In this document: positions 18,053-62,958 of the stretch, one piece after another | Numbering within the stretch: position 1 is the stretch's first letter | Layout of the letters: the number at the start of each line of letters is the position of its first letter | IMG/VR virus record: IMGVR_UViG_3300021137_000001 | Span: 248,001 to 312,000 of that record | DNA length: 64,000 bases | Reading direction: 5' to 3' (one strand) | Notes under the pieces: generated by a model | The model's database searches: none | What the model saw: the letters and a program-made list of their open reading frames with translations, nothing else | What the model was told of the DNA's origin: nothing | Position numbers and translations under genes: made by a program

Positions 18053-19316
18053 ATACTGCTGGTCTCTCTTTTAATATGTCTGCTAGTGTAAGCGTATCAT
18101 TACGTATACTTTCTAATTGTAACACACGTTGCTTACCTTTGTCAAGCTCTTTCTTATATGTATCAGGCCATTGCTCGTCAAACGTTGGTCGTGATTTTAA
18201 CTGTACAAGTACATCTTGCATAGCGCCGGAAGTCTGTGGAATTAGTTCGTCTAACCATGGATGTAGTAAGTCGCGTGGTAGAGCAAGGGGACTAAGGATA
18301 ATGTCGGGGCTAAAGCTGAAAACAACTTTAGCCAAGATGTCTACATTTTCTTCTGAAGCAAGGTTGGTAATGTTGATGATTTCGAACATACCGGGCAATG
18401 TGAGAGTGAAGTCGATTCGCATTTGTCGACGATGAGTAGCTGTTTTAATTCCTTCACGGAAGTTTTCAAGCCATTGATTATAATCAAGTCCTGTTCTAAT
18501 ATATTCTCCAATTGCTCCCGTTCCATCAAGGCTGGCACAGATTTGCCAGTCGCGTAACCCAGATAAAATATCGCTGAAGAGATTGATACCACGATAGTTG
18601 ACGCGGCTAAGATTAGTATTGTACCTTGCGTAAGCATGCTTGCCATCTCCTAAATCAATAATGCGTTTCATATAACGCCAATGTTGTTCGTACATTAGTG
18701 GTTCACCACCAACCCAATATACTTCTTCAACTTGATGATTCTCGACTGCTTGAGCAAACTCCTGTTCTATTTGACTATCTTGAAATGCTGTGATCTCTTG
18801 TTTTACTTCTGGTTTCATCCAATTATTCTTTGGGTTGTTCCAATTAATCATATTATGTTGTCGTTGTTCAGTTTCCCAAGCACTCGATAACATATCTCCG
18901 CACATGCGACACTTAAAATTACATAAGTTACTAAATCTATAGTCCCAACTTACAGGGCGCATAGTTGTGTAACCTGTTGTATCTGTTGTCTCTTGTACTT
19001 GTAAATACTTATTACCAAACATAGAATCAAAATAACTACGGTAAACTGATGTGTTCAATAGCTTGTCATTACACACTTCGCATTCAGGAAGTGTTTCCCC
19101 TGCCATCATACGCCGACGTACTGACTTCATATGCTCACTGTTCCAGTGTTCATCTAAGGTAATTGGAATGTATTTGCCTGTGCCAGCTCGAGTATCGATA
19201 TACTGTTCAAAGTTTTGCGCAGGCTCGCGACTAGCACAGCATATACGTCTTTCAGTTTGTGGTGAAAGATATGTGTGACACCATGCGGCAAGGCAAAGTG
19301 TACTAGGCTTCAACAT
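18027..19316 (-). CDS. radical SAM protein with N-terminal SPASM/twitch-like Cys cluster (rSAM-5)
   Basis: CNFKCRMC, GGEP; N-terminal C..W.H...ICC ... CEVC. Confidence 0.9.
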   Translation of the reverse strand: MLKPSTLCLAAWCHTYLSPQTERRICCASREPAQNFEQYIDTRAGTGKYIPITLDEHWNSEHMKSVRRRMMAGETLPECEVCNDKLLNTSVYRSYFDSMFGNKYLQVQETTDTTGYTTMRPVSWDYRFSNLCNFKCRMCGDMLSSAWETEQRQHNMINWNNPKNNWMKPEVKQEITAFQDSQIEQEFAQAVENHQVEEVYWVGGEPLMYEQHWRYMKRIIDLGDGKHAYARYNTNLSRVNYRGINLFSDILSGLRDWQICASLDGTGAIGEYIRTGLDYNQWLENFREGIKTATHRRQMRIDFTLTLPGMFEIINITNLASEENVDILAKVVFSFSPDIILSPLALPRDLLHPWLDELIPQTSGAMQDVLVQLKSRPTFDEQWPDTYKKELDKGKQRVLQLESIRNDTLTLADILKERPAVYEWYKNIA

Positions 19317-20502
19317 AACCCATTGCTAATGCAATTTCCTTATGTGTTGTTAGCATCGATTCTTTTCTAAATTCATCAGTCTGTTGCATTTTACGTAAGA
19401 ATTCTGTGCCATCACTGCCGTTGCCATTTTCGATAAACTTAATGATACGCATAATTTCTGCTTTGTGTTTACTGCTAAACTCATGTGTGCGCAATCTATT
19501 AATAACAAGTTCTTTTGCGGCTGGTGTCATTCTAGCAATACACATGTGCCACGGGTCGTGTAACATATTAAAGTAAACATTATCAAATGTTTGTTGCGCA
19601 ATCCAATCACATATCTCGGGTAAGTAATAAACGTTTTGTATGTTTATTGTTGTACATAAATGTATAGTTAATTTCTTACTTCTTAGTTCAATAAACTTAG
19701 CTATGTTTGCTTGTACTTCGTCCCACTTAGCAAGATAGCGTTCATATTCAAAACGTGCGCCCATATTGTCTATACTAAATGCAATCTCAACGTGCTTAAA
19801 TTCTTTCCACACATCGGCAAAATCTGGGAAGACAGTGCCGTTTGTATTGTAATGTATTTCAATATCTTTACTATAACCATGCTCTACTGCATAACGCAAT
19901 AGTTCAAAGTGTTCTTTAATTAAGAATGGCTCACCTCCCGTAAATTCAAAGTATTTAATGTTTGGTAGCAGTGCTCGTAAGTTATCCCAAAATTGTGGAT
20001 TCTCACGCGGCCATGCGCCTTGCTTAAGAAATGTATATGCTAAATGGTCTTTCTTTTTAACTTCTGGTAAGTATGCCATTTCTTCTTGTGCCCACGGACT
20101 GCTACTCCAGCTACCGCATATACGACATTTAAGATTACAAATATTGCCGAGCTTTAAGTCAATGAACCAAAGTTGATCAGGGTTAGTATTACTAAAGTCA
20201 ACTTTATCATAGTATTCTTTAAGACGTATGCGACTGTTAATGCGCTTGCTTACTCTGCCTGCCGCCTCTTCGTCCCAACATCTTTTGCATGTTGCCGGTT
20301 GCTTACCAAGTAAAAACTCTTGACGCAGGTCTTGCATATATCCACTTTGATATATTTGTGTAAGTGTGTGTTTGTTTAAATCGTACTTGACACCAGCTGC
20401 ATCTGTTATCTCATCTATAGCAAGACAACAAGGTCGACTTGTACCAATTGGACTAGTTTCAATACTAATCCAAGGTAGCATGCATATTTTACTTGACAAC
20501 AT
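19303..20502 (-). CDS. radical SAM protein with N-terminal SPASM/twitch-like Cys cluster (rSAM-4)
   Basis: CNLKCRIC, TGGEP; CMLPW...PCC ... CKRCW. Confidence 0.9.
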   Translation of the reverse strand: MLSSKICMLPWISIETSPIGTSRPCCLAIDEITDAAGVKYDLNKHTLTQIYQSGYMQDLRQEFLLGKQPATCKRCWDEEAAGRVSKRINSRIRLKEYYDKVDFSNTNPDQLWFIDLKLGNICNLKCRICGSWSSSPWAQEEMAYLPEVKKKDHLAYTFLKQGAWPRENPQFWDNLRALLPNIKYFEFTGGEPFLIKEHFELLRYAVEHGYSKDIEIHYNTNGTVFPDFADVWKEFKHVEIAFSIDNMGARFEYERYLAKWDEVQANIAKFIELRSKKLTIHLCTTINIQNVYYLPEICDWIAQQTFDNVYFNMLHDPWHMCIARMTPAAKELVINRLRTHEFSSKHKAEIMRIIKFIENGNGSDGTEFLRKMQQTDEFRKESMLTTHKEIALAMGYVEA

Positions 20503-21802
20503 ATGATTTTAAATCTATAAACTCAGGGAATACCTGTCGGAATCTTTCGTTACGATAAATGTCCATTTGTTCGTTTACTCGAAAAAATTCACTCAATAAT
20601 TCACTCTTATCATCGGCATCCATAAAGTGCAATAAACTCTGATATCCATTGGTGGCACGTTTTAAATAATCAGAAGGTGCTAACCATTGTATATGTTCTT
20701 CTATTTTTTCCCTAGCCCGATCTTTATATACCTTAGGCAATACATCAATACGGTCGCGTTCGGATCCTTGTAGAATATTAATGTTCCAATCTTGTGGTTT
20801 AATAAATCCACGCTCAACCCAATCTCTATGGAAATCTGTGATGTGTAATATATTATAGATACTAACAGTAGGACTTATATAAAAGTCTACATTAGGACAT
20901 TTTTCAATCATGCGGCGGCGATTATTTTCAATGTCTGCCCACTTAGTACCTTTGCGTATATATTCGCCTCGTTCACCCATACCATCTAAACTAGCACCTA
21001 CACTAACACTATCAAATAACTGCCAATAATCTAATACATCTTCATTTTTAAGATTAAGTCTGCTAAAGTTTGTGTTGTATACTAATTTAACATCAAAGCG
21101 TTCTTGACGCACTAACTCTTTTAATACTTTATAATGTTCTTCCATGATAAGCGGTTCGCCACCGGCAAAGTAAATCTGATCAAGATACGGAATGTGTTGT
21201 AGCATTTGCACCCACATGTCGTTTTCTGTACGACCTGCAAACATAATTTGTGGGTGATTACGTGGACCAAACAGTTTAGTTTCTTCTGTGTACCAACTAC
21301 TGCTAAACAAACTTCCACACGTTCTGCAACTAAAGTTACATAGATTACTAAAGCGTACATCATAGTAACGTAGTTTAAAGTCCTCTACTGTGCCGTTTGC
21401 TAGTGTGTTATCAACTAATGCAATGTGTTGCCCAAAGTTTTTATTTGAACTGTTGCGCATACTCATAAAGCCACTTGCTTCTTGCTCGTAGCACTTAGTA
21501 CATTCTTTACACGATTTTTCTGTAAGCATGTTTGTACGCATAGTTTTATATGCATCATCATTCCATACTTCTTCCATTGTGTTTTGTTTGAAGTTACCAA
21601 TTGGGTAATCCATTTCGCCGAGACAACAAGGATATGCTCGTCCGTCTGGGAAGCCATGCATGTGTATCCACGGGATTATGCAAAATGTATCACTATCAAC
21701 TAATCTCGCAAGTTGATCTTTACGTAAATCATCTTCGCTTATATAAACTGGCTTACGTGTATGATAGTTATGATTCTTATAATATTCTGTTTCTTTTGTC
21801 AA
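20489..21802 (-). CDS. radical SAM protein with N-terminal SPASM/twitch-like Cys cluster (rSAM-3)
   Basis: CNFSCRTC, AGGEP; CIIPW.H...PCC ... CTKCY. Confidence 0.9.
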   Translation of the reverse strand: MTKETEYYKNHNYHTRKPVYISEDDLRKDQLARLVDSDTFCIIPWIHMHGFPDGRAYPCCLGEMDYPIGNFKQNTMEEVWNDDAYKTMRTNMLTEKSCKECTKCYEQEASGFMSMRNSSNKNFGQHIALVDNTLANGTVEDFKLRYYDVRFSNLCNFSCRTCGSLFSSSWYTEETKLFGPRNHPQIMFAGRTENDMWVQMLQHIPYLDQIYFAGGEPLIMEEHYKVLKELVRQERFDVKLVYNTNFSRLNLKNEDVLDYWQLFDSVSVGASLDGMGERGEYIRKGTKWADIENNRRRMIEKCPNVDFYISPTVSIYNILHITDFHRDWVERGFIKPQDWNINILQGSERDRIDVLPKVYKDRAREKIEEHIQWLAPSDYLKRATNGYQSLLHFMDADDKSELLSEFFRVNEQMDIYRNERFRQVFPEFIDLKSYVVK

Positions 21803-23133
21803 AGTGTGTTATACCAGTTAGTTAATTGTGTAAACGTGTATTTAAAGTCTTTACCTCGGCGTTGGTCGTATTGCTGATAAAAATTCTTAAAGTCTTGTAA
21901 TAAGTTGTTGTCAACTGTTGTATCTTGTTGTAAGTAATCAATCAAACGTTTAATATGTTCAAGTTCATGCTCGTGTAATGCACTATTCTTACTATTGTTA
22001 ACTAAAAATTCACTAAGCTCTTTACTATATATTGCACGTAGCTCAGCTGGTAGTATCATCGGACTTTGAAAACTAGGGAAGCGCAGTATGTTTAATGTAA
22101 ATGACAATGCTTCGCGGCCATACTTCTCTTTAAGCTTCATCATGTTGTATAAAAATTCACTAAGGCTCGGCAAGCATAATGCGTTGATAGTACACATGAC
22201 ATGTATGCTACGCACTTTTTTACTGTTAAGTAAGAATATTAAATTGCCAACCCATTGTTTCCATTCTAGTCCATCACGTATATACTCTGCATGTGTGCCC
22301 ATTGACTCATTGCTAGTGTAGATATCAAGTTCAATACCCTGTGTGCTATCGAGCAAGCGTTCAAGTATATCACGCTTAAAGCCAAGATTACTATTAATAG
22401 CAAGACGTGTAGTACTCGCGCCTTTGTGTGCTTTAAACCAATCGATTAAGCGCCACGTGTTATCTGACATTAGTGGTTCGCCGCCTGTAATGCGTAGCTC
22501 TTTTAATGTTTTATGTAGGTCTGTTTCCCACCATTTGAAGAATGCTTCCACATACGGATTAACTTCATTGAGTTTAAATAATTGACTGCTACTATGCTCG
22601 TGAGTAAAATGATTTCTGCCGTCTGAAACCAAATTGGTGTATGCCCCGTTCTGATGTATGTCTCTAACCCAACTAGTGCTAAAAGCAGGGTTGCAGTAAG
22701 AACAAGCAAACTGGCAAGTTCTGTCAAAGGCAATTTCCAAAGTTTGTAAGTTAACATCTTCGTTTGCAGGTAAATTGTATGCATCATCTAAGTCCTTATC
22801 GTTATAAATTACAGTCTTATATACACGGTCACTAACTGCATCTGTGCTCATGTCTTCTATCTTCCAGCAGTAATCACAGCCCGCAGGTCGTTCTCCTGCT
22901 TGCATTTGTCTACGCTGTTCTTTCTTTTGCGGAGTATTATGTATTGCGCTTGGATTTGTTTTAATTGCTTCTATATCAATTGCATGAGGCAATGGGTGAT
23001 GACAACTTGTAGTTTGTCCACTTCCTAACCATATAGTAGCGTTGTACCATTTTGCCGCGCAGAAGCTAGCGGACTTAATGTCAATCACTCTACGCTTATA
23101 TGCTAAATCTGTTTCGTTATTAATTTTCGGCAT
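21799..23133 (-). CDS. radical SAM protein with N-terminal Cys/His cluster (rSAM-2)
   Basis: CQFACSYC, TGGEP; CAAKW...SCHHP ... CDYCW. Confidence 0.9.
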   Translation of the reverse strand: MPKINNETDLAYKRRVIDIKSASFCAAKWYNATIWLGSGQTTSCHHPLPHAIDIEAIKTNPSAIHNTPQKKEQRRQMQAGERPAGCDYCWKIEDMSTDAVSDRVYKTVIYNDKDLDDAYNLPANEDVNLQTLEIAFDRTCQFACSYCNPAFSTSWVRDIHQNGAYTNLVSDGRNHFTHEHSSSQLFKLNEVNPYVEAFFKWWETDLHKTLKELRITGGEPLMSDNTWRLIDWFKAHKGASTTRLAINSNLGFKRDILERLLDSTQGIELDIYTSNESMGTHAEYIRDGLEWKQWVGNLIFLLNSKKVRSIHVMCTINALCLPSLSEFLYNMMKLKEKYGREALSFTLNILRFPSFQSPMILPAELRAIYSKELSEFLVNNSKNSALHEHELEHIKRLIDYLQQDTTVDNNLLQDFKNFYQQYDQRRGKDFKYTFTQLTNWYNTL

Positions 23134-24505
23134 GGTATTTACACTCCTGCCAAAAATCTTTCATTTGTGGGAATGTGTTCAAAAAGTTTAATCCTCTACG
23201 TTTATCGTATTCATTAAAAAATCTATAGAAGTCTGCACGTTGCGTTTTTAAATAGGTCGCATCTAAGTCAGCTCCTTGTTTCATCCAATCAAGATTACGT
23301 TCCATACGTTGTATCTCATAGTCTTTAAAGCCCTCAAAGTTATCAGCACGTTCGTCTGCTTGGTTTGTTCGCATAAATGTAACAACATCTTCTAATATGC
23401 GAACATAACTTGCTGGCAGTATTTGTAAACTTTGATATGTTGGGCTACGTAACAGTGGCGTGTCAAACCATACACGTTGATACGTTGAGCTAAACTTTTT
23501 ACGCATATTTAGAATTGATTCTAACAAGCGTTGCAGGCCAAGTATGTTTAAATTGTTCATTGTAATAATAAATGTTAAACTATTGCGATATGGAATATCC
23601 GTTAGGTATCGTTGAACATACGACCCACATCTATTCCAGTCTAATCCATCCCGTATATATTCAGCATGATCGGCAATGCCCGTATCTAAACTAACATACT
23701 GCATAAAGTGTTCAATGCGCTCGCCTTCGCATAGTTGTTTAACTTTATCTAGATACTTATTAAACAACGCGGGTTCAACACTAAAGTTACTTGTAACATC
23801 AACGTGCAAATCACTTTTCGGCAAAGCAAGTATGTAATCAAACACACGATGCGTATTCTTATCCATAAGCGGTTCGCCACCAGTCATTCTAAAGTGTTTT
23901 AGTTTAGGATATAGCTCAGGCCACCAGGCCCAGAATGCATCAACATAGGGGTTAGCTTCACGTACTGGGATTGGCTTACGTCGACCTTGAAAGTGCTCAG
24001 GTGCATTGTGCGGAGTACTTGTTGGGTATGCACCCCAACGATCAATATCTTTGCCCCACTCTGTTGAATACTGTGGACTGCAATATGAACAAGCTAAGTT
24101 ACAGCCATGACTGAAGTTTACTTCAACATAACTTGGCACAACATCTTGGTCCCATGGTGCATTTACTATCGCTTCATAGTGTTCAGCCGCCCATGGTTCA
24201 CCAGAACGATAGTGTCTGTCGCTTAGTTGCTTGTTATCTTCTGCACTCCAACAGTAACTACATTCTGCTGGGCGTGTTTGCTCTAGCATAAGTTTACGTT
24301 GCTGTTTCTTGTAGTCAGTATTGTGTAGCGCACCTGGATTGAATAACAATGGCGCACTATCAATCTCGTGCAACGGAGGGTGATAACAACTGTTAGTCAT
24401 GCCAGTTGTTAAATGCAAACTTACTTGTTGCCACTTAGCCAAGCAGAGTGCAGGTCCTAACTTGTCCTTCATTTCTTCTGCAGCTGACATAAAATTGCTA
24501 CTCAC
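23120..24505 (-). CDS. radical SAM protein with N-terminal Cys/His cluster (rSAM-1)
   Basis: CNLACSYC, TGGEP; CLAKW...SCYHP ... CSYCW. Confidence 0.9.
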   Translation of the reverse strand: MSSNFMSAAEEMKDKLGPALCLAKWQQVSLHLTTGMTNSCYHPPLHEIDSAPLLFNPGALHNTDYKKQQRKLMLEQTRPAECSYCWSAEDNKQLSDRHYRSGEPWAAEHYEAIVNAPWDQDVVPSYVEVNFSHGCNLACSYCSPQYSTEWGKDIDRWGAYPTSTPHNAPEHFQGRRKPIPVREANPYVDAFWAWWPELYPKLKHFRMTGGEPLMDKNTHRVFDYILALPKSDLHVDVTSNFSVEPALFNKYLDKVKQLCEGERIEHFMQYVSLDTGIADHAEYIRDGLDWNRCGSYVQRYLTDIPYRNSLTFIITMNNLNILGLQRLLESILNMRKKFSSTYQRVWFDTPLLRSPTYQSLQILPASYVRILEDVVTFMRTNQADERADNFEGFKDYEIQRMERNLDWMKQGADLDATYLKTQRADFYRFFNEYDKRRGLNFLNTFPQMKDFWQECKYHAEN

Positions 24506-25400
24506 GTGTCATTATGCCTGTGTTCTTAAATACGCTTTTGTAATGATGCTTAAAGAATCTGCTTTGGTCTGCATTTAATTGTGGTGCAGGTAGACCCAAT
24601 CGTAAATTTAACGAAAGCGACATTTCCCCGCATTCCTCGACTAAGTTGTACACTTTATGTTGATGCCATATTCTGTTTAGTGCATCAAAGTCTTGCACTT
24701 CTCTATAATCCCAATCTGTAATCATTGTCATGTATGTACCAAGTTTAGCACCATACATTGCCCAGTCGCCATTCTCTACATCCATACCTACATTGTGCCA
24801 TATGCTTAAATGATCATAGTTGCGATTGTGTACCCGTTTCTCAAACTCTTGCAGGCTTGGCTTAGTACCTCGAGCTAAACACATTTTAACACCTTCCCTA
24901 AAGCCTGCTCGCCACGCTTGATACGGAGTTGCGTTTGGATATGTTGTGCTGTAACAATCGTTCATACTCCAATAGCGTGGATCAAAACAAAACTCAACAG
25001 CGGTATCATCGTCACCGTTACTTGCTTCGTGAGTACGCATATTGTTGACAAAGTCTTTAGTCCAACAACTCATGCCGCCATTGCCGTACATTAGTCCGTT
25101 TATTTCGTTACGTGCTTTCCAGCGAAATACCACGTCACTGTTTGTGTTATCAAGTTGTAATTGTAAATTGAAAAATGCAGGATCGGGTATATTATCGCCA
25201 TCGATAAGAATGAATCTATCTGTATCCGATATCGCTGCGGCGGCTTTGTGCGCAGCGTCACTACCTTTGACTCCATCTACACGTTTGGCCCACGGTACCA
25301 TATTTTGTATCTTAATCCAATTTTGCTCTTTGTTTGGCTCATCGTATGTTAGCATCACACAATCTAAATCTGCAATATCAATTAGTGGCATAGTATTCAA
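24498..25400 (-). CDS. GT-A-like glycosyltransferase
   Basis: FILIDGDN (DxD), RVDGVKG..AAHKAAA, NGLMYG, WRAGFRE. Confidence 0.7.
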   Translation of the reverse strand: MNTMPLIDIADLDCVMLTYDEPNKEQNWIKIQNMVPWAKRVDGVKGSDAAHKAAAAISDTDRFILIDGDNIPDPAFFNLQLQLDNTNSDVVFRWKARNEINGLMYGNGGMSCWTKDFVNNMRTHEASNGDDDTAVEFCFDPRYWSMNDCYSTTYPNATPYQAWRAGFREGVKMCLARGTKPSLQEFEKRVHNRNYDHLSIWHNVGMDVENGDWAMYGAKLGTYMTMITDWDYREVQDFDALNRIWHQHKVYNLVEECGEMSLSLNLRLGLPAPQLNADQSRFFKHHYKSVFKNTGIMTRE

Positions 25401-25728: not shown

Positions 25729-26563
25729 ATTCCTTAACTAAAGCATCTGTTATCCAACTCTTTTCATGATAGTGAATGGGATGATATTGATTTGTATTTG
25801 CTATACGTATCATCGGTAAATCTGTTTCGCACATTACTAATTCGGGCCATGGCGTACTTGTCCACTTGTTAATAGCAGGTTTCATATGTACAAAGTTAAT
25901 AAAATCTGCGCTGGGCAATGTACAATTTTCTATGCCCAAGATCTTTGCCGCTAGTGCATACACTACATCAGTAGTCGGATTATTATCGCGACAGTTAAGT
26001 AATACCTTATCGCGAATGTGCGCCCAGTTTCTAAATAGTTGTTCTGCTAGTGTAAAAAATTGGGTTGCTTCGCGTGTGTATCTAAAATACATTAGTCCAT
26101 TGTAGGTGTCGGGCAATTCATTATCGTCAAACAACTTTCTGTATTCACGTGATCGACTTAACTCTTGTTTATAATCTCTATAGCCAGTGCTTAATACAAT
26201 GTTCTTTAATCTAAAAGCGGTCCACCAGTGTGCAATACTTCTAGTGAATACAATATCACTTTCAAGTTTAATTGTTTCTTTGAATGGTGTGAGATAAAAT
26301 GCTTGCCATTCGTTACTTAACTTCCAAGCTTCGTCTACGGCTAAGTCATTCTCAATTGTAATTACATAATCAAACACTCGACGATGCTGTTCGGTTACTC
26401 GCGCTAGTGTATTCTTATCAACTGCAACTGCGTATAAGCTATTGGGCATTGTAAGTTTAATGCTCATTGCCTGCACGTAAGCAAGACGCAAATAATCGAC
26501 ATCTGCGGTGTTTTGCGCAATTGTCATAAAGCCTTGCTGTGCTTGATGGGGTGTTATTCGCAT
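25709..26563 (-). CDS. GT-like protein (DxD changed to ESD)
   Basis: FYLTPFKETIKLESD; paralogous to 26554-27315. Confidence 0.6.
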   Translation of the reverse strand: MRITPHQAQQGFMTIAQNTADVDYLRLAYVQAMSIKLTMPNSLYAVAVDKNTLARVTEQHRRVFDYVITIENDLAVDEAWKLSNEWQAFYLTPFKETIKLESDIVFTRSIAHWWTAFRLKNIVLSTGYRDYKQELSRSREYRKLFDDNELPDTYNGLMYFRYTREATQFFTLAEQLFRNWAHIRDKVLLNCRDNNPTTDVVYALAAKILGIENCTLPSADFINFVHMKPAINKWTSTPWPELVMCETDLPMIRIANTNQYHPIHYHEKSWITDALVKEYEDELK

Positions 26564-27315
26564 AAGGTATCTACCAATTTATCAAAGTCGGCACTTAATA
26601 AGTAATCTTTATCCATTATGTGTACGTTTTGCAGGGCAATGACATGTGCTATATTTTCTTCACGTATAATCATCTTTTCACCTGTTATTTCGATGTTTTT
26701 GACTAGTTTATCTATGGTTAGCATAGTAAAAGGGATACTTTGTGATAGGTCAGTAGTGTAACCACTAATAATATTGTTAGCAATTGCAAATGCGTAATCA
26801 TTGCGAAAGTTGCGTTCTCTAATGTGATACAACTTTTGATAATAAGCATAGTTACGTTCAATTCTGCCTACTAAGTCAAACAATGCTTTCGTTTTATCAG
26901 TGCGCTTAAATGTTATAGCAGTTGCCCACACATAATCTAAACTCATTTGCCCCATGTTGCCCGACATTGACATTGTAGGACTTTGATTGTGATGCATTAA
27001 CTTGTAATCAATTGTAGTGTCAAGTATGTTTAATAAACTCGTATCAAATTGTAAATAATCGCTATCAAGTAATATAGTTTCATCATACGGACTAAGTTCA
27101 TACGCACGATATCTACCACCGTTCTTCCATTGTGTTCCACCTGCGTGACCTGTTCTAAAGTTTTTAGCAGATGTAACGCCAGTATCTGTTATAATAGTAG
27201 TTGGTAGATTTAATGTGTGCTCAATCAGTCGTGCGGCTTGCTCAGCGATTTTAATGTAATCAACTGTATCTGTGTTAACAGCAAATAATATTACGCCCTT
27301 AGACTTTTCTTGCAC
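26554..27315 (-). CDS. GT-A-like glycosyltransferase
   Basis: YELSPYDETILLDSDY (DxD), RNDYAFAIA. Confidence 0.65.
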   Translation of the reverse strand: MQEKSKGVILFAVNTDTVDYIKIAEQAARLIEHTLNLPTTIITDTGVTSAKNFRTGHAGGTQWKNGGRYRAYELSPYDETILLDSDYLQFDTSLLNILDTTIDYKLMHHNQSPTMSMSGNMGQMSLDYVWATAITFKRTDKTKALFDLVGRIERNYAYYQKLYHIRERNFRNDYAFAIANNIISGYTTDLSQSIPFTMLTIDKLVKNIEITGEKMIIREENIAHVIALQNVHIMDKDYLLSADFDKLVDTLCE

Positions 27316-27616
27316 GTTTAAGTTCTTCGTGTTGTATATGCCACAAGTTCATTGCCTGCTGATAGTGTTGTGTGCATATATCTAAAAATTCCGATCGTTG
27401 CACAAAGATTGGGTTCTCGTACGTATCTTCTAAGTATAGCGCAACACTGGGCCATGTTGAGAGAAACGCAATAAGCTCTGGTGTTACCTTAAAGAGCCCA
27501 TTGTTATATGGTACGTGCAGATCTGTTTGCACTTTCTCTTTAAGTATACGTTTGTTTGTTTGATAATCCGTTGCTTGTTTAATTTGAGCAACTAGTTGAT
27601 TGATTTCTGTTGTCAT
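27299..27616 (-). CDS. hypothetical protein
   Basis: 105-aa ORF; first gene below the 70-bp cassette. Confidence 0.65.
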   Translation of the reverse strand: MTTEINQLVAQIKQATDYQTNKRILKEKVQTDLHVPYNNGLFKVTPELIAFLSTWPSVALYLEDTYENPIFVQRSEFLDICTQHYQQAMNLWHIQHEELKRARKV

Positions 27617-27631
27617 AATAGTAATTAGCCA

Positions 27632-27662
27632 TAAAAATAGGTAAGTGTTTATTCTTACCTAT
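27632..27662 (-). terminator. hairpin plus U-tract in repeat copy 1 (terminator or operator)
   Basis: Minus strand ATAGGTAAG-8 nt-CTTACCTAT then T-run; AT-rich 9-bp stem. Confidence 0.55.
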
Positions 27663-27691
27663 AGTGTACTACATTTATACGAGTATGTCAA
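27663..27691 (-). promoter_or_regulatory. sigma70-type promoter in repeat copy 1
   Basis: Minus strand TTGACA, 17-bp spacer, TACACT. Confidence 0.7.
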
Positions 27692-27694
27692 CTA

Positions 27695-28648
27695 TTATGC
27701 AACTACCGGAGTGCCCCATTGAGATACCAAATATGTTGTTTCTGGGTAAACAATATCAACTCGATGATTAAGTGTTACACTTAACACTGCGTTAAGAGCA
27801 TGAGTTGGTGCGTTTAAATATAAGTTAAAAGAAACTACTGCACCTTTATCACCATGCGCCGATACATTTTGCGCACTTGATAGCATTTGAATTTGTGCGT
27901 AATCCGTAGTATATGCGGCAGTTGTACTTGTAACTTGTATAAGAGACACTGCGCCCGTTGTAAGTCCTTGATACCCAATTGTAGTCGAATTAGTATTAAG
28001 CGTACCCCCTGTGCCAGTACGTCCGCCATTTGATGCGTTACGGAATGCGGTCATACCACCGACATTAGTTACTAGTAATGTAGATACATCGACGCTACGT
28101 GCAGTAGCATTATTAGTCGATGATATTATAACAAGATTCAATTGCCCGCCTGCATTAAAAAAGTAACGTGCAGCATCACCACTGGCAAATGTTACTGTTC
28201 TAGTGGCAAATACTGCGGCATACGCCACACCTGTTGCTGCCGAAATTACTGGGGAAAATGTAGCACCAGTAGTAGTTGCGCCTTGTGCAGTAAATGTTGA
28301 ACTGTTGGTGTTAATTGTTGTAACTGCGGTATTTAATGCGGCGCTATATGTAGCGGTTGCGCCAGATGTAAGGGTTGGTACGGAGATAGCAGCGGCAGCC
28401 CCACTCTGATGTTGTACACATACATTAAGTGCTGTTAATAATCCGCTCCATTGTGTTGCTGTTACAATGCCTGCAGCCGATATAGTATTGAGATTAGTAA
28501 CTACTTGCCCATAGCCAACTGCTCCGGAACCAACACCGAGTACGTAGGCAATATTAACTGGCGAGGTAGTATAAGTGCCCTGTGTACCACCCCATGCTAA
28601 TGCATTAAAATCGGCTGCTTGAATTGTTCCAGTTGATGCGTATGACAT
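27695..28648 (-). CDS. virion structural / fibre-like protein, paralog B
   Basis: Thr/Ala/Ser/Gly-rich; AWGGTQGTY, AARYFFNAGG and VYPE.TYL shared with paralog A. Confidence 0.7.
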   Translation of the reverse strand: MSYASTGTIQAADFNALAWGGTQGTYTTSPVNIAYVLGVGSGAVGYGQVVTNLNTISAAGIVTATQWSGLLTALNVCVQHQSGAAAAISVPTLTSGATATYSAALNTAVTTINTNSSTFTAQGATTTGATFSPVISAATGVAYAAVFATRTVTFASGDAARYFFNAGGQLNLVIISSTNNATARSVDVSTLLVTNVGGMTAFRNASNGGRTGTGGTLNTNSTTIGYQGLTTGAVSLIQVTSTTAAYTTDYAQIQMLSSAQNVSAHGDKGAVVSFNLYLNAPTHALNAVLSVTLNHRVDIVYPETTYLVSQWGTPVVA

Positions 28649-28705
28649 TTTCTATTAATTCCTTTACTGCAATATAATAATTACTTATCTTCAATGCATT
28701 GCATT

Positions 28706-28775
28706 CATAAAAATAGGTAAGTGTTTATTCTTACCTATAGTGTACTACATTTATATTAGTATGTCAACTATTATG
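28706..28775. repeat. 70-bp direct repeat, copy 2 (same promoter plus hairpin)
   Basis: 68/70 identical to 27630-27699; -35 at 28762-67, -10 at 28739-44 (minus strand). Confidence 0.95.
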
Positions 28776-29727
28776 TAATTGACACTGTACCCCATGAGTT
28801 AGTTGTTAAGTAGGTTGATTCTGGATAAACAACATCAATCTGGAAGTTTAACGTAGCATTAATTGTGTCGTCCCATGCATGATCGGCAACTACATAGCCC
28901 AATCTAAAAGCAACACCATATCCAGCTGCACCGTTAGTAGTGTCGGGATTGAAGCCATAAACTTGTAAATATGAATAATTGGCAGTATATGCCGCAGTAG
29001 TGTCAGTTACTTGTACTAGTGTATTTGCCACGCCTTGTACATTATTTCTATATCCATATGCTGTATTATTTGTATTCTGTGTAAGGCCAGTACCGCTGCG
29101 CCCAGCATTTGTTGTTTGACGAAATTGTGTTATTCCGCCGACTGCATTAATTACACGTACAAAACTTTGGCTTGACAAAGATCCATTAAGATCAGTTGCA
29201 GAAACGCGAACATTTAAATAGCCGCCTGCATTAAAGAAGTAACGTGCAGCTTGTGCACCTGATGAAAAAGTCGCAAAGTGATCAGTATATGAGTTTACCC
29301 CTGTTGTACTACCGGCACCTATGTTTGTAGTTGCAAGCGAACCAGTAGTTGTAGCACCTTGCGCTGTATATAATGCAGAATTTGTGTTAATTGTTGTTAC
29401 AGCCGTTGCCACTGTACTAAAGTAAGTAATTTTATTACCAGCAGTAATAGTCGGGCTCACTGTTAATTGTGCGCCTGCGCCACTTTGATGACCCAACGCA
29501 GCATTTAATGTTGTTAACAACCCGCTCCACTGTACCGCAGTAACAGTACCTGCTGCTGCAACTGTGTTAATGGCAGTAACAGACTGGCCGTAGCCCACTG
29601 CGCCAGAACCAACTCCCATAACATAAGCAATGTTAGTTGGGCTTGCTGTGTAAGTACCTTGTGTACCACCCCATGCTAAGTTATTATAATCCGTTGCTTG
29701 TATTAAGCCAGCTGATGCGTATGACAT
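28771..29727 (-). CDS. virion structural / fibre-like protein, paralog A
   Basis: Aligns end to end with 27695-28648. Confidence 0.7.
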   Translation of the reverse strand: MSYASAGLIQATDYNNLAWGGTQGTYTASPTNIAYVMGVGSGAVGYGQSVTAINTVAAAGTVTAVQWSGLLTTLNAALGHQSGAGAQLTVSPTITAGNKITYFSTVATAVTTINTNSALYTAQGATTTGSLATTNIGAGSTTGVNSYTDHFATFSSGAQAARYFFNAGGYLNVRVSATDLNGSLSSQSFVRVINAVGGITQFRQTTNAGRSGTGLTQNTNNTAYGYRNNVQGVANTLVQVTDTTAAYTANYSYLQVYGFNPDTTNGAAGYGVAFRLGYVVADHAWDDTINATLNFQIDVVYPESTYLTTNSWGTVSIT

Positions 29728-29738
29728 ATTTGTTATCC

Positions 29739-31229
29739 TTAACTATTTAATTTAACTATTGCTTCAACAGTGCCTTCGCCCATTGATGTTTTATTTTCTA
29801 ACGCACGACCAATAACATTAAATGCTGTCATTTCGCTACGTGTTGCAGCTCGAGCTAAACCACGACCTGCACTTACTAACCTATCACCCTTTTTAACAGT
29901 ACCAATTACACGAACTGGCACACGACCATTGACTGCAACTGGTGGGTGAGTAACATCGTTACCTGCTCCACCGTTCATTAAGAAGCCTGCTTTCATACTT
30001 ATCACTCCAAACACTGCCTCGCTTAAATCCTGAACCACGGCAGTGATTTCTTTAAGTCCGCCAAGTTCAACAACTGTTCCTGGTGTATATGATGCGTCTG
30101 ATTCAAAGCGTTCCGCTAAGTCAGCGTATAATGAAGTAGTCGATGTACCAATTAAGTTACCGTAGAATGTAGAAGCAATTGCGTTAACTGCATATACGTT
30201 AGCAAATTTAGTACCAGTTGCACCAATGTTAATTGTATTTGGGCTGTTTGGTAAGATTGTGTTTGATGCAATAGTAATACCTTGATTTAATGTATAACCA
30301 GTTACTGTTAAGTTACCAGTAACACTTGCTGTACCTTGTGTAATAAAATTACCCGGTAATGTAACTGCTGAAGTAGTACCGTTAATACCAATTGCTTTAG
30401 TACTAACCCCACCCATCTTAACCCATAAGTTCAAGTCGCCGTTATTGAAACTGTTAGTTAAACTAACTGCTCCGCCAGTAGAAACAATAGTTAAATCACT
30501 ACTTACTACCAATCCACCATTTACTGAAAGTTGATAGTTAGTACTTGTATTTTGATCATTACGTAAGTACGAACCGCCAGTAACACCATTGACTGTTAGT
30601 GCGTTACTTGCATCGCCTGTAAATTGTGCGCCAGTAAGTGTACTTGAACTAATTAAGTTCATACCAGGTTTAACTGTTGTAAATCCTGCAATTGATGTTT
30701 GTGGAGTAAATGTACTATCTTTACTTAGAATAGCAATTACGCTATTTGAAATATAAAATTTAACAACAACGTGACTAATTGAACTACTATCTAAAATAGT
30801 TTCAACTACTGCACCACTTGTTCCCGATGTTGCAGTGTATGATGGGCCAATTGTTACCCACGCACTACCGCTCCATACTTTAAGTTGAGCATTATTAGTG
30901 TCCCACCATAAGTCACCAGTCACTGGGCTAGTCGGCGAACTGCTAGAAGCAGCAGAACTACTAATTGGTTTCCATCCTGCAGAACCACCAGCATAAACTT
31001 TCAATACATTATTAGTACTATCGTACCAAAGTTGACCAGTTAATGCAGCACTTGGTGCAGTTGTATTAGAAAAGTTTTCAAGCAACTTAATATAGTTTTC
31101 ATTTAAGAAAATACCATAACCTGCATAGTTTTTACCGATTAAAGTTAAACTAGTTGTTGTGGAATTGACTGTTCCGTCTGCTATAGTTGCGAGTGTAACA
31201 CCTGCTGTTGTAGTTATTGTATATGACAT
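29739..31229 (-). CDS. tail fibre-like protein with C-terminal peptidase G2-like intramolecular chaperone domain
   Basis: N-terminal GKNYAGYG..LNEN..KLLENF, G.LWWD repeats; C-terminal YADLAE..PGTVV..GG..GRVPVRV.G...KGD.LV. Confidence 0.7.
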   Translation of the reverse strand: MSYTITTTAGVTLATIADGTVNSTTTSLTLIGKNYAGYGIFLNENYIKLLENFSNTTAPSAALTGQLWYDSTNNVLKVYAGGSAGWKPISSSAASSSSPTSPVTGDLWWDTNNAQLKVWSGSAWVTIGPSYTATSGTSGAVVETILDSSSISHVVVKFYISNSVIAILSKDSTFTPQTSIAGFTTVKPGMNLISSSTLTGAQFTGDASNALTVNGVTGGSYLRNDQNTSTNYQLSVNGGLVVSSDLTIVSTGGAVSLTNSFNNGDLNLWVKMGGVSTKAIGINGTTSAVTLPGNFITQGTASVTGNLTVTGYTLNQGITIASNTILPNSPNTINIGATGTKFANVYAVNAIASTFYGNLIGTSTTSLYADLAERFESDASYTPGTVVELGGLKEITAVVQDLSEAVFGVISMKAGFLMNGGAGNDVTHPPVAVNGRVPVRVIGTVKKGDRLVSAGRGLARAATRSEMTAFNVIGRALENKTSMGEGTVEAIVKLNS

Positions 31230-31249
31230 TATTATTACCTATTATATGT

Positions 31250-31255
31250 TATTTA
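31250..31255 (-). promoter_or_regulatory. late promoter upstream of 31229
   Basis: TAAATA-ACA-TATAAT-AGG. Confidence 0.6.
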
Positions 31256-31261
31256 TCTGCA

Positions 31262-33392: not shown

Positions 33393-36300
33393 TTAAGGTG
33401 CAATTAATGTAGCTGTACTATTTTTTAAGAATAATACTTGCGGTGTTATTGCTCCATTAAATCCAGTTCCGTCTGTTGCTGTTGTTGCACCATGATTTTG
33501 CCATACATTTGCAGTAATTAGCGTTACATTTGCAGCAATAGTTACTGTACCCGCAGTGCCAACTAATCCAGCTTTTGTCATACTTAATGGATATACATTT
33601 CCTGTACTTGTTCCATTAATTATCAACGCAGATCCAACCGTTGGGTTAGTAGTTATAGTTACTGGGTATACTCTGCTATCAACTCCGTTAATTGCAATGT
33701 TTCCAGCGCCAGTTACTAATTTAGCCATACTATTATAGCTTACTGCTATAGTATTAATAGTTGCACTATCACGGGTTACATATAAGTTAGCGCCAGTTAA
33801 TCCCTGGGTTACGATATCACCAGTTACCACAGTAACATTGCCACTTAATTTTACATCATTTTCTAAATATCTAAATGGGTTCGTAGAATTTGATGTAACT
33901 AATACTATATTAGTTGATGTGTTGACACTAGATATTGTTGCGCTTGCACCTAATATTGATTGTGTAATAACATCACCGATATTAGCAGTAATTCTGCTTG
34001 ATAAATCAAGATAATATGACACAGTATCAGTGACCGAATATGTTGTAGTGCCTAATGTCATTGTACTGTTAGCAGTTGCATTCGGAACAAGTTGTGACGT
34101 ACTTGCATCAACTACACGCAATCCACTTACATGCATTAATGGAGTACTTGTTCCTTGTGTACCGCGACGTATTTGCCCTAATGTATTCGCAATTAAATTA
34201 ATTGTGTAATATGTTATTCGTTCACCATTGATAAACACTACGCCCGGAGTTGCACCAGCAAGATTAGGCACAGACAATAGACTTGCATTAGTTACAATAA
34301 TAGTTGTATCACCAATATGCAAATTAGCCGCAAGTGTTGTCGAATGTGCAGTCGCAATACGTAAATAACTTTCTTCACGCATCATGTTACTAAACATTCT
34401 GTATCCGATTACATCAACATTGCCATTGATTTTAGTATATACTTGCATATCTAATGTATCAAATACAATGCCCGGGACTAATTCTTCTGGAGCATGACTT
34501 GAATATGTATCAACATACGCACCACCAACAACATCAATATCTTCTGCACGTGTGCCAAGAGCTAAATCGGTGTAATTGCTTTGTATCAATGAATCAACTG
34601 TTGCGTCAGATAACATCGGCAAGCCATCTGCAGCATATTGAATGTTGTCAAACATACCATTATCAAATGGTGTTGCACCACTAAAGCCCGGAGCTTGTTC
34701 AAAACCAAGTCCTTGTACTTGTACACCCGGATAATCAATACCACGCAATAATTGTTTTAAATCTCTTGCTGGCATAGTTGCACCTGGTTCGTAGTAGCCA
34801 GTGATACGATCATTTGCATTAGTAAAGTTCGATGCATTATAAACAGTATAATCATTCGAAATAAACGTAGAACCAGTTGTTATATTTGCATTAACTGTAA
34901 ACGCTTGACGTTTTGCTCCGGCCAATGTACCGATATGAGTTATGATATCACCAGCAGTGTAAGATGTGTTTGCTGCCCATTCTTTAACTGAACTAGTGTA
35001 ACTAATTCTATCAAATTTCAGTGTTGTATCAAAGCTTCTAACTTGATTATTTTTAAGTACAGCATACGCAGTTGCTGGTGTTGTATTACTACCATTAAGA
35101 ACTACTGTTGGCGTTGTATAATATCCACTACCATTTTTAATCATATCAATTCTAATCACTGCACCGGTATCATAGTTAATAATTGCACGTGCTGTTGCAC
35201 CAGTACCAACACCAACGATAGTAACAATTGGTTCAGCAGTATAACCACTACCTGCATTTTCAACTAAAATACTCTCAACACGATGATTTCTATTTGCATA
35301 CCATTGATCGTATGGTGCAGTTTGCCATAGTGCTTCATCTTTGGCAACTTGCTCACCACTCGGACTACGGAATACTTTCATATCTGTATCATAATATGCT
35401 GGTAAATCAAAGTCAGTTACGCTACCAGCAAATTCATCTGTACTATTATAGCTAATTAAATATTCACGCAATTTAGTTGCGTACGGTTTAACTTCTGTAA
35501 TATAGTCTTGATAATAAGTTTGATTATCCTTAATATAGTTAGGGTATTGTACTAATGAACGCAATTGATGTATTACACTAATGAAACTAGTTTTAAATAT
35601 CCAATCAACATATTTTTGTTCATTGAATAGATAGTTAACCATTACAAAGAATAGTTTATTAAATTCGGCAGCTAGCTCGCCGATGAATATATCTTCTCTG
35701 AGTGCAGTAAGAATCGAACGTATTTCAATATTTGGGTTTTGGTCGAATCTCTTAGACGAAAATCCTTGATTGCCAAATCCTAATTCATTATCAGCAAAAT
35801 TGCCAATTGATGTATCTAGTTGCACAGTTCCGTTTTGTATTCCAACAACACTAAAACTAAGATTACTGTTTACAACAATTAAACTCCAGCCATGACTCCC
35901 GCCATTGCTTACTCTGACAAGTATTTCGTTGCCCGGAGCAACTGATAATTTTAATGCATCAACTAGTGTAGGTACAACATATGTAATTTGATCAGCGATG
36001 CTATATCCCGCTGCATACCAATCAACATAATGCCAGTATAAATTAGTTTTGTAACTTTGTACTCTACTAATTTCCCATGTTTTGCTCATTGATAATTCGT
36101 ACACTACCCATAAATTATCTTGTGTAGTATCTTGATCTACTAATACTTTATAACCTGTAGCCAATGTTACTGTATCGATATATGCTAGCTCTGCATCTGT
36201 TGCAATTTTTTGGTCGTATTCACCAAGTTTAGCACTAGGTTGTGGCTCTGATGAATTTAACATAGTTAAATCATATTCACGTGCAATAGGCTTAGTTATT

Positions 36301-62873: not shown

Positions 62874-62958
62874 ATGCTGACATTTTGAATAAATAGTAGT
62901 GTAGTTCGCGGGTGTAGGAACCCCAACTACTCTAACATTGTAAAGGAATGTCAGCATG
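62874..62958 (+). promoter_or_regulatory. structured leader: 11-bp outer stem, late promoter and inner hairpin
   Basis: ATGCTGACATT (62874-84) is the reverse complement of AATGTCAGCAT (62947-57); TAAATA 62890-95; GTAGTT..GGGT/ACCC..AACTAC 62901-30. Confidence 0.8.

What the first reader, a model, noticed from the sequence alone, without database searches (positions are those of the whole stretch)
27630..28775. Duplicated 70-bp promoter/terminator cassette after each fibre paralog
Seen: the copies are 68/70 identical, although the paralogous proteins upstream of them are only about half identical by eye. Each copy has stop TAA TAG, TTGACA-17-TACACT, then a 9-bp hairpin plus T-run that overlaps the predicted +1. 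Inference: (a) read-through late RNA terminates while RNA started at this promoter lacks the 5' arm and escapes, so the modification cluster would get its own host-RNAP (early) promoter; (b) the direct repeats allow recombinational loss or gain of paralog B (a fibre accordion); (c) the high identity implies gene conversion or strong selection.
Basis: partly seen in the sequence, partly recalled or inferred. Interest (0 to 1): 0.7.

Follow-up and report, generated by a model that had tools for sequence, protein, structure and literature searches.

The report
Repeated promoter-terminator cassette in jumbo phage
Two near-identical 70-bp cassettes, each joining a host-type promoter to an overlapping terminator hairpin, follow two diverged tail-module genes of an uncultured freshwater jumbo phage; they match the "PeSL" regulatory cassettes of T4-type phages, which insulate genes and act as recombination joints for swapping them.

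Summary
Window 27630-27699 and 28706-28775 (minus strand) are 68/70 identical. Each reads TAA TAG, TTGACA-17-TACACT, then a 9-bp hairpin plus T-run starting right after the -10. The two genes upstream are 54% identical proteins.

Thirteen cassette variants from related phages conserve exactly the -35, the -10, both stem arms and the T-run, while spacer and loop vary freely. More distant relatives carry unrelated promoter-plus-overlapping-hairpin sequences at the same gene junction. This architecture is a described subclass of PeSL (promoter-early stem-loop) cassettes of T4-type phages.

Similarity between related phages switches abruptly at or inside the cassette, so it works as a recombination joint. 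The two paralogs are not sister genes. The copies share loop and spacer bases that differ between lineages, so their identity reflects recent recombination or conversion, not selection alone.

One low-depth metagenome contig joins the flanks and skips exactly one 1076-bp unit, but an assembly chimera is not excluded. No RNA data exist, so promoter and terminator activity remain predictions.

The genes are not shown to be fibres. The gene after the cassette looks like a fibre-assembly chaperone, not a modification gene.

Verdict: real feature, new member of a known kind.

The parts
28771..29727 (-). Paralog A, 318 aa, uncharacterised phage protein of the tail-fibre module: helical N-terminal part plus C-terminal beta-sandwich
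   Evidence: ORF. 54% identical to B. Groups with the single-copy homologues of L045, L065 and L043. Model pLDDT 88.6.
28706..28775 (-). Cassette copy A. It includes the last codon of paralog A, its TAA stop and a second in-frame TAG.
   Evidence: 68/70 identical to copy B.
28739..28767 (-). Sigma-70-type promoter of copy A: -35 TTGACA (28762-28767), 17-nt spacer, -10 TACACT (28739-28744)
   Evidence: The -35 and the T-A-x-A-x-T of the -10 are invariant in 13 cassette variants.
28706..28738 (-). Hairpin of copy A (28713-28738; 9 bp, 8-nt loop) followed by the T-run TTTTATG (28706-28712)
   Evidence: Both stem arms and the T-run are invariant in 13 variants, with one compensatory pair.
28649..28705 (-). 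57-nt spacer between copy A and the start of paralog B. It is a decayed copy of the last ~48 nt of the upstream fibre-like gene plus its ribosome-binding region.
   Evidence: Local alignment score 36 against 22.4 +/- 3.8 for shuffles, p about 0.002.
27695..28648 (-). Paralog B, 317 aa. It is an intact gene under purifying selection.
   Evidence: ORF. 25 of 32 listed differences from a ~94% identical strain fall at third codon positions. It branches outside paralog A and its relatives.
27630..27699 (-). Cassette copy B
   Evidence: 67/70 identical to the single cassette of relative L043.
27663..27691 (-). Sigma-70-type promoter of copy B: -35 TTGACA (27686-27691), 17-nt spacer, -10 TACACT (27663-27668)
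27630..27662 (-). Hairpin of copy B (27637-27662) followed by the T-run (27630-27636)
27299..27616 (-). 105-aa gene that follows the cassette in nearly all relatives. Its helix/beta-hairpin/helix model resembles DUF4376 and tail-fibre assembly proteins. It has no Shine-Dalgarno sequence.
   Evidence: Synteny. Model pLDDT 91.9. AFDB cluster hits to DUF4376 and prophage tail proteins. Atlas lead.
29739..31256 (-). Upstream 496-aa fibre-like gene (Peptidase_G2 intramolecular-chaperone domain) with the nearest late-promoter motif ATAAATA at 31250-31256. Paralog A is probably co-transcribed from here.
   Evidence: Late motif.

Best explanation
Each cassette is a composite promoter-terminator element of the PeSL type. 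[quoted passage not shown] A terminator hairpin has its 5' arm between the -10 and the transcription start. RNA arriving from upstream (late transcripts of the fibre module) contains the whole hairpin plus U-run and is terminated or attenuated. RNA started at the cassette's own promoter begins inside the 5' arm, cannot form the hairpin, and runs into the next gene. The element therefore insulates the variable receptor-binding-like gene from the conserved 105-aa chaperone-like gene and what lies behind it. Because the cassette is conserved between otherwise diverged alleles and lineages, it also serves as a patch of homology where modules are exchanged. Two copies exist because a 1076-bp unit stands in tandem: the tail end of the upstream gene, a paralog and a cassette. 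The copies are near-identical because the arrangement was assembled or homogenised by recombination recently, relative to the age of the two alleles. Recombination within the 50-bp identical core would remove or add paralog B. Shown: the sequence anatomy, the conservation pattern, the mosaic boundaries and the non-sister status of A and B. Inferred: promoter activity, termination, escape of promoter-started RNA, and the deletion variant.
For: Anatomy and exact repeat. The genome uses sigma-70-type promoters heavily (40 matches against 0 for the control; list) and encodes a gp55-like late sigma factor, which suggests a T4-like early/late programme. No late motif precedes any minus-strand gene between 15546 and 27616, so cassette B is the first recognisable promoter of that block. 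In alignment A2 of 13 cassette variants, the -35, the -10 key bases, both stem arms and the T-run are invariant, while spacer and loop vary. At the same gene junction, unrelated sequences in distant relatives again combine a TTGACA-type promoter with a hairpin plus T-run. The hairpin encloses or follows the -10 in L002, L004, L006, L014, L022 and L020, and lies in the spacer in L031, L034 and L037. Folding gives -9.9 kcal/mol for read-through RNA and -0.3 for RNA from the predicted +1. [quoted passage not shown] They demonstrated promoter and terminator activity and PeSL-PeSL recombination (PMC2839356; PMC4122927). Mosaic boundaries are sharp. Window versus L043 is 58% identical in the last 450 nt of the paralog, 96% in the cassette and 96% in the downstream gene. 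L060 is L043-like up to the -10 (98%) and L066-like from the loop onward (93%, same loop), so a crossover lies inside the cassette. A and B are not sisters. The copies differ at 2 of 25 freely varying positions, P about 1e-5 if they had diverged as cross-lineage pairs do. The X17 contig joins 27629 to 28706, skipping 1076 bp, with 50 nt fitting both sides.
Against: There is no transcript evidence of any kind; no RNA run was listed. The stem is AU-rich (3 G-C pairs, 8-nt loop), so termination may be weak. The -10 TACACT matches only 4 of 6 consensus positions. Only two copies exist in the genome, and only about 5 of 57 intergenic strong promoters carry an overlapping hairpin, whereas classical PeSLs form multi-copy families in hyperplastic early regions. 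If termination were efficient, paralog B, apparently a virion-module gene, would depend on an early-type promoter, which is odd. The deletion contig is single, at depth 3.3, from a mixed-strain run, and its repeat core (50 nt) is longer than the assembler's k of 31 (note). Stem arms are invariant even where flanks are about 65% identical. That is more conservation than an RNA hairpin alone requires.
Confidence: 0.6

Rival explanations
1. The element is a plain intrinsic terminator at the end of the late fibre operon. The TTGACA-17-TACACT match is not a working promoter, or only a negligible one. Downstream genes are expressed by read-through.
For: Hairpin plus T-run pass the terminator scan. 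The -10 is imperfect. Sigma-70-like matches in this AT-rich window are no more frequent than in shuffles overall (52 found against 59.6 expected).
Against: The -35 and the A2/T6 positions of the -10 are invariant across 13 variants while the 17-nt spacer between them varies at up to 9 positions. Distant relatives with unrelated sequence again have near-consensus promoters at this junction, several without any hairpin (L017, L030, L033, L041). The exact consensus pattern is enriched 40 to 0 in the genome. No other promoter is recognisable for the downstream block.
Confidence: 0.12
2. The inverted repeat ATAGGTAAG-N8-CTTACCTAT is a protein-binding site on DNA or RNA. It could be an operator that represses the promoter it overlaps, or a target of a recombination or homing protein. 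Its terminator-like look would then be secondary.
For: It overlaps the expected +1, the classical operator position. Both arms are sequence-invariant in 13 variants, including lineages with about 65% identical flanks, with only one compensatory change. PeSL authors also speculated that a protein targets the stem (PMC2839356).
Against: The T-run lies only on the 3' side of the coding strand, as for a one-directional terminator. The half-site is not enriched elsewhere in the genome (two stray copies), so no regulon is visible. Other lineages have quite different hairpins at the same place, always with a T-run. The half-site spacing (17 bp centre to centre) is unusual for helix-turn-helix dimers; this last point rests on my general knowledge.
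Confidence: 0.1
3. On the origin of the identity: the pair arose by an old in-place tandem duplication of gene plus cassette. The paralogs then diverged under diversifying selection. The cassettes are kept identical by continuing gene conversion plus purifying selection, not by a recent recombination that brought together alleles already diverged.
For: The repeat unit is a clean head-to-tail 1076-bp unit that includes a vestige of the upstream gene's end. Both cassettes are of the type linked to this backbone. Tandem paralogs are common in relatives such as L003, L005, L025, L026 and L029.
Against: B branches outside the clade that unites A with single-copy genes of at least four other lineages (support 93/93 and 100/98), and B's branch is not longer than A's. 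In a ~94% identical strain, cassette A has two loop changes that cassette B lacks, so conversion is not continuous. The vestigial 57 nt are heavily decayed while the cassette is not.
Confidence: 0.3
4. The TATAAATG inside the promoter spacer is a T4-type late promoter. The cassette would then restart late transcription for the next gene rather than early host-type transcription.
For: The phage has a gp55-like late sigma factor. Its late motif is (N)TAAATA, at about 100 gene-proximal sites. Genome position 124941 shows a true ATAAATA placed inside a TTGACA-17-TACACT promoter.
Against: The cassette has TAAATG, not TAAATA. The stretch is not conserved in relatives (ACAAATG, CTAAAAT, TAATATA). A start about 6-8 nt after it would include the whole hairpin, so such RNA would terminate at once.
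Confidence: 0.06

Closest known systems
PeSL (promoter-early stem-loop) cassettes of T4-type phages: RB49/phi1, PST/T4 and nt-1/KVP40 (Arbiol et al. 2010, PMC2839356; Comeau et al. 2014, PMC4122927)
   Same: The order of parts matches: upstream stop codon(s), near-consensus sigma-70 promoter, a stem-loop with terminator features overlapping or just after the -10, then the start of the next gene. [quoted passage not shown] Repeated copies flank a dispensable or variable gene. Indels and replacements between close relatives have their boundaries in the element.
   Different: The host phage is not a T4-type phage. It is a 329-kb freshwater jumbo phage whose baseplate protein is about 36% identical to that of Agrobacterium phage Atu_ph07 and the Rak2/BF-like jumbo phages. 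Only two copies exist rather than dozens. They lie in the virion tail module, not in an early hyperplastic region, and published PeSLs were said to be rare there. The stem is AU-rich (TAGGTAAG), not G-tract/C-tract. The same element is kept at one orthologous junction across many lineages. Promoter activity, terminator activity and mini-circles are untested here.
Modular exchange of host-range determinants in T4-superfamily tail fibres (gp37/gp38 adhesin locus; Trojet et al. 2011, PMC3157838, seen by title and abstract only)
   Same: A highly variable distal tail-module gene sits after a fibre gene and before a small assembly-type gene. Alleles are swapped between otherwise similar backbones.
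   Different: There is no sequence or confident fold similarity of the paralogs to gp38 or gp37. The exchange boundary here is a regulatory cassette rather than conserved glycine-rich motifs inside the gene; that comparison rests on my knowledge of the paper.
Intrinsic (Rho-independent) terminators and sigma-70 promoters of bacteria
   Same: Stem-loop followed by a U-run. TTGACA, 17 nt, then TAnnnT.
   Different: The two overlap so that the promoter's own transcript lacks the 5' arm. The stem has only 3 G-C pairs.

Membership tests
PeSL (promoter-early stem-loop) cassette | Near-consensus sigma-70-type promoter (-35, about 17 nt, -10) | tested here: met
   TTGACA-17-TACACT in both copies. Key bases are invariant in 13 variants. 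This is a sequence-level test only.
PeSL (promoter-early stem-loop) cassette | Stem-loop able to act as terminator or attenuator, placed within or next to the promoter (five published positions) | tested here: met
   9-bp stem, -9.9 kcal/mol, T-run; the 5' arm starts right after the -10. This matches the published subclass 'downstream of the -10'.
PeSL (promoter-early stem-loop) cassette | [quoted passage not shown] | tested here: met
   TAA TAG directly precede the -35. The ATG of the 105-aa gene lies 13 nt after copy B.
PeSL (promoter-early stem-loop) cassette | Many conserved copies per genome, concentrated in hyperplastic early regions | tested here: not met
   There are only two copies, in the tail module. 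Three other promoter-overlapping hairpins in the genome (64618, 93498, 206009) have unrelated sequences.
PeSL (promoter-early stem-loop) cassette | Boundaries of insertions, deletions and replacements between close relatives lie in the element | tested here: met
   Window versus L043 is 58% / 96% / 96% across the cassette. L060 is a mosaic with its crossover inside the cassette. Every relative recovered with this cassette has one copy of it, and the loci long enough to judge show one paralog. The X17 contig skips 1076 bp (weak).
PeSL (promoter-early stem-loop) cassette | Promoter and terminator activity demonstrated; mini-circles formed by recombination between copies | not testable with these tools
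   No RNA run was listed. Only assembled contigs were available, not raw reads.
PeSL (promoter-early stem-loop) cassette | Carried by a T4-type phage with an early (sigma-70) / late (gp55) programme | tested here: inconclusive
   A gp55-like late sigma factor and T4-like baseplate genes are present, and the late motif TAAATA is found. The phage is nevertheless a distant jumbo relative, about 36% identical to Atu_ph07 in the baseplate wedge protein.
Intrinsic terminator | Stable stem-loop immediately followed by a U-run on the transcribed strand | tested here: met
   The stem is weak (3 G-C pairs); efficiency is unknown.
   No PHROG, Pfam or NCBIfam hit. Foldseek against PDB gave E above 0.05. 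VIA-align gave at best Z 5.2-5.4 to C-terminal domains of Acinetobacter phage tailspikes and to Csp jelly-roll domains. Only the context (after two fibre-like genes, before a DUF4376-like gene) suggests the role.

The most novel reading that the evidence does not exclude
The cassette may be more than a passive patch of homology. Its invariant stem and T-run (ATAGGTAAG...CTTACCTATTTTTATGG) are kept letter for letter in lineages whose flanks are only about 65% identical. This could be a recognition site for a dedicated protein that promotes cassette-to-cassette exchange. The unit of receptor-binding gene plus cassette would then be a mobile, self-insulated host-range cartridge that jumbo phages gain, lose and swap in natural lake populations.
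Probability: 0.12. Interest if true: 0.6.

Novelty: new member of a known kind. Interest (0 to 1): 0.36.

Why it matters
It extends PeSL-type composite promoter-terminator cassettes to a distant, uncultured group of jumbo phages and to the virion tail module, where published work found such elements to be rare. Here one element appears to set a transcription boundary and also to mark where a fast-evolving tail-module gene, whose receptor-binding role is only suggested by context, is replaced, duplicated or lost. If confirmed, this gives a simple handle for predicting swap points of such genes in metagenomic phage genomes. It is also a natural example of a one-way transcriptional valve, which stops incoming RNA polymerase and lets its own transcripts through. 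The practical caution is that such 50-70-bp exact repeats break short-read assemblies exactly at variable tail-module genes.

Tried and rejected
- **Isolate phage searches.** Megablast and tblastn of the region and of paralog A against the INPHARED phage collection gave no match. No cultured close relative is available, and the host is unknown.
- **Family libraries.** PHROG, Pfam and NCBIfam gave nothing for the paralogs or the five genes after them.
- **Rfam.** No match at E up to 1 over window 26500-30000.
- **RNA runs.** None was listed, so transcription starts and termination could not be examined.
- **Read laying.** Only Logan contigs were served. They break inside the 50-nt identical core, so copy-number junctions cannot be resolved.
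- **Depth dip in run X3.** I first read the dip over paralog B as a sign of deletion. I rejected this, because strain divergence in the variable genes explains it equally well.
- **Automatic scan for composite elements.** My scan of intergenic regions of related loci was too strict and missed cases evident by eye and by RNAfold. I did not use its counts.
- **Covariation test of the hairpin.** It is uninformative: 8 of 9 pairs never vary.
- **Late-promoter and operator readings.** Both were considered and ranked low; see the rival explanations.
- **Gene conversion at the N-termini of A and B.** Not supported. A is as similar to L045 and L064 there as it is to B.
Full report
**Setting.** The window is bases 248001-312000 of a complete 329,321-bp virus genome with direct terminal repeats and 37.4% G+C. 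It was assembled from freshwater metagenomes. It has no close relative among sequenced isolates. Its baseplate wedge protein is about 36% identical to those of Agrobacterium phage Atu_ph07, Sinorhizobium phage Phosso, Salicola phage SCTP-2, Serratia phage BF and Erwinia jumbo phages. It encodes T4-like baseplate proteins and a gp55-like late sigma factor.

The genome shows two promoter vocabularies. One is dozens of near-consensus sigma-70 promoters: TTGACA-N17-TAYAMT occurs 40 times against 0 for the reversed control. The other is a T4-like late motif, (N)TAAATA, 11-30 nt upstream of about 100 genes, including the baseplate and fibre genes of this window.

**Observation.** All genes in the finding lie on the minus strand. 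In the direction of transcription the order is as follows.
- A 465-aa and a 496-aa fibre-like gene. They share an N-terminal domain, and the second has a Peptidase_G2 intramolecular-chaperone domain and an ATAAATA late motif.
- Paralog A (28771-29727).
- Cassette copy A (28706-28775).
- A 57-nt spacer.
- Paralog B (27695-28648).
- Cassette copy B (27630-27699).
- A 105-aa gene (27299-27616).

The copies are 68/70 identical and there is no third copy in the genome. Each reads TAA-TAG-TTGACA-17-TACACT-A-TAGGTAAG-AATAAACA-CTTACCTA-TTTTTATG. The paralogs are 54% identical as proteins. The rest of the 1076-bp repeat unit is 25-73% identical per 60-nt window.

**What the conserved parts are.** A scan of IMG/VR and JGI metagenome contigs for the hairpin, together with a protein-based search for paralog homologues, recovered the same junction in many uncultured phages. 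Thirteen distinct cassette variants align without difficulty (alignment A2).
- Invariant or nearly so: the stop codon, the first four bases (TTGA) of the -35, T-A-x-A-x-T of the -10, both 9-nt stem arms, the T-run and the following ATGG.
- Free to vary: the 17-nt spacer (up to 9 differences) and the loop (8 or 9 nt, six unrelated sequences).

This is the pattern expected if the promoter hexamers and the hairpin are the selected parts. The stem gives little covariation evidence: 8 of 9 pairs never vary and one shows a compensatory change.

Stronger support comes from more distant relatives, whose paralogs are 27-45% identical. At the same position their sequences are unrelated, yet they again combine a TTGACA-type promoter with a hairpin plus T-run. 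The hairpin encloses the -10 in L002, L004, L006, L014/L022 and L020. It lies in the spacer in L031, L034 and L037, and directly precedes the -35 in L008-13 and L029. A few relatives have only a promoter, and a few only a hairpin.

**How it probably works.** The 5' arm begins directly after the -10, so the expected start, about 7 nt downstream, lies inside that arm. RNA that includes the whole element folds into the hairpin (-9.9 kcal/mol) followed by UUUUAU. RNA from the predicted start is unstructured at -0.3 kcal/mol. The T-run is on the 3' side of the coding strand only. Read-through transcripts should therefore terminate or be attenuated, while promoter-started transcripts escape. This part is inference, because no RNA run was listed.

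No late motif precedes any minus-strand gene from 27616 down to 15546. The cassette promoter is therefore the first recognisable promoter of that block; weaker sigma-70-like sites lie at 25511 and about 18145.

**What the neighbouring genes are.** The paralogs have no family assignment. The model has pLDDT 88.6 and shows a helical N-terminal part and a C-terminal beta-sandwich. It has no Foldseek match among solved structures. Its VIA-align matches are weak, Z up to 5.4, to C-terminal domains of Acinetobacter phage tailspikes, Csp protease jelly-rolls and galectins. 'Fibre paralog' is thus a guess from context; 'variable distal tail-module protein' is safer.

Paralog B is a working gene: 25 of 32 listed differences from a ~94% identical strain fall at third codon positions. 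The 105-aa protein models well (pLDDT 91.9) as helix, beta-hairpins, helix. It matches DUF4376 proteins and prophage tail or tail-fibre proteins in AlphaFold clusters (E about 1e-2, TM 0.5-0.6; Atlas lead). It did not match Pfam by sequence. It is most likely a fibre-assembly or chaperone-type protein.

**Evolution of the pair.** The 57 nt between copy A and paralog B align with the last ~48 nt of the upstream fibre gene plus its ribosome-binding region, as found in front of paralog A and of the single-copy genes of relatives (score 36 against 22.4 +/- 3.8). The repeat unit is therefore the tail of the upstream gene, a paralog and a cassette.

In a maximum-likelihood tree of 36 homologues, A groups with the single-copy genes of L045, L065, L051-53, L043 and L060 (support 100/98). 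L001 and L064 join next (93/93), and B lies outside all of these. A and B are thus old alleles, not a recent duplicate pair.

Yet their cassettes share the 8-nt loop exactly and 15 of 17 spacer bases, although these positions differ at half or more of sites between lineages. The probability of at most 2 differences in 25 is about 1e-5 at that rate. Purifying selection cannot explain identity at positions that are demonstrably free. The copies must share recent ancestry through recombination or conversion.

Both copies are of the type found in L043, the closest backbone relative. L043 has one paralog, one cassette that is 67/70 identical, and a 105-aa gene that is 96% identical. In the ~94% identical strain, which also carries both paralogs, cassette A has two loop substitutions that cassette B lacks. 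Homogenisation is therefore not continuous.

**The cassette as a recombination joint.** Between the window and L043, identity is 58% in the last 450 nt of the paralog, 96% in the cassette and 96% in the downstream gene. L060 is 98% identical to L043 up to the -10 but only 71% beyond the hairpin. Beyond the hairpin it is 93% identical to L066 and has L066's loop. The crossover therefore lies inside the cassette, in the invariant 5' arm. Cassette type follows the downstream backbone, whereas the paralog allele is reassorted.

**Structural variation.** Every relative recovered with this cassette has one copy of it, and the loci long enough to judge show a single paralog. More distant relatives have one or two paralogs, sometimes in tandem without a cassette between them.

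In lake metagenome run X17, a 392-nt contig at depth 3.3 joins 27629 to 28706. It skips exactly 1076 bp, has 0-1 mismatches, and 50 nt fit both sides. No mismatch-free contig covers paralog B in that run. This is what a form lacking B would look like.

However, the run holds mixed strains, the repeat core exceeds the assembler's word length, and the other strain's B 3' end is not assembled. A chimeric assembly path is therefore possible (note). I count it as suggestive only.

**Comparison with known systems.** The element fits the published description of PeSLs in T4-type phages. These are small cassettes made of the upstream stop codon, a strong sigma-70 promoter and a stem-loop. [quoted passage not shown] Promoter and terminator activity were demonstrated, and recombination between copies deletes, inserts or replaces the genes between them and yields mini-circles (PMC2839356; PMC4122927).

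It differs in four respects: the host phage group, the copy number (two), the location in the tail module, and the AU-rich stem that is conserved at one orthologous junction. The multi-copy criterion is not met. The activity and mini-circle criteria could not be tested.

**Verdict.** This is a real, non-chance feature. Reading (b) is supported by comparative mosaics and weakly by one contig. For reading (c), recombination or conversion is favoured over selection. The finding is a new member of a known kind, of moderate interest.

Noticed in passing
window 18027-24505 (-): Five tandem radical-SAM genes. At least two match NCBIfam NF033640, 'twitch domain-containing radical SAM protein', at 1e-87 and 1e-121, and two have an N-terminal SPASM domain. 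They are followed by a DUF6071/GDSL-like gene, a Nol-like carbamoyltransferase (13260-14756), a P-loop kinase-like gene and a dCMP deaminase. Their substrate (DNA, nucleotide or protein) is unknown.
   Followed up: partly
window 33393-45983 (-): A single 4196-aa ORF lies between the baseplate wedge gene and the fibre-like genes. It was not analysed.
   Followed up: no
window 27617-27636 (-) and the same place in L043, L045, L050, L064, L069: The 105-aa gene has no Shine-Dalgarno sequence. The conserved ATG within TTTTTATGG, right after the T-run, opens a short upstream ORF in most relatives. In L050 and L069 its stop overlaps the main start (ATGA), which suggests translational coupling.
   Followed up: partly
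L073, L076, L078 (genome 6280, 45752, 91598); also genome 131103, 140380, 145303, 161296: A multi-copy family of early promoter plus 5' leader (TTGACA...gctgTATAATgctatacatacactaacaacaaggag...ATG) lies in the early region. This looks more like the classical multi-copy PeSL situation, but without an obvious stem-loop.
   Followed up: partly
genome 64618, 93498, 206009 (outside the window): Three further strong sigma-70-type promoters have a hairpin plus T-run overlapping the -10. Their sequences are unrelated to the cassette. The one at 206009 also has TAATAG directly before TTGACA and a TACACT -10.
   Followed up: partly
window about 62880-62925 (+); also genome 58378, 68496, 236832, 239338 and 245821 upstream regions: A repeated motif, TAAATA(n)2-3 followed by a core close to GTGTAGTTCGCGAT (it varies by 1-3 bases between copies), lies about 57-68 nt upstream of several small genes. 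It may be a late promoter with a conserved leader or a small RNA element. No Rfam search was run there.
   Followed up: no
window 56880-57557 (+): A homing-endonuclease-like gene (phrog_314) lies immediately upstream of the gp55-like late sigma factor gene at 57561-58460.
   Followed up: no
L043:11375-14393: Relative L043 carries about 3 kb (four ORFs of 153-344 aa) that is absent from the window between the 300-aa gene and the first radical-SAM gene, at about window 24505-24517. This is another indel in the downstream block.
   Followed up: no
L003, L005, L025, L026, L029: Distant relatives carry two tandem paralogs of the same family with no cassette between them; the genes abut or overlap. 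In L026 and L029 the two copies form two orthologous pairs, so that duplication is old.
   Followed up: partly
genome 124941 (outside the window): A true late motif, ATAAATA, sits inside the spacer of a TTGACA-17-TACACT promoter. This may be a dual early/late promoter.
   Followed up: no
window 28637-28775, run X4 contig 26: A further strain carries a cassette-A-like copy preceded by a different paralog allele, whose C-terminus reads ...WGTPVV, and followed by a B-like start. Several two-paralog haplotypes therefore co-occur in these lakes.
   Followed up: no
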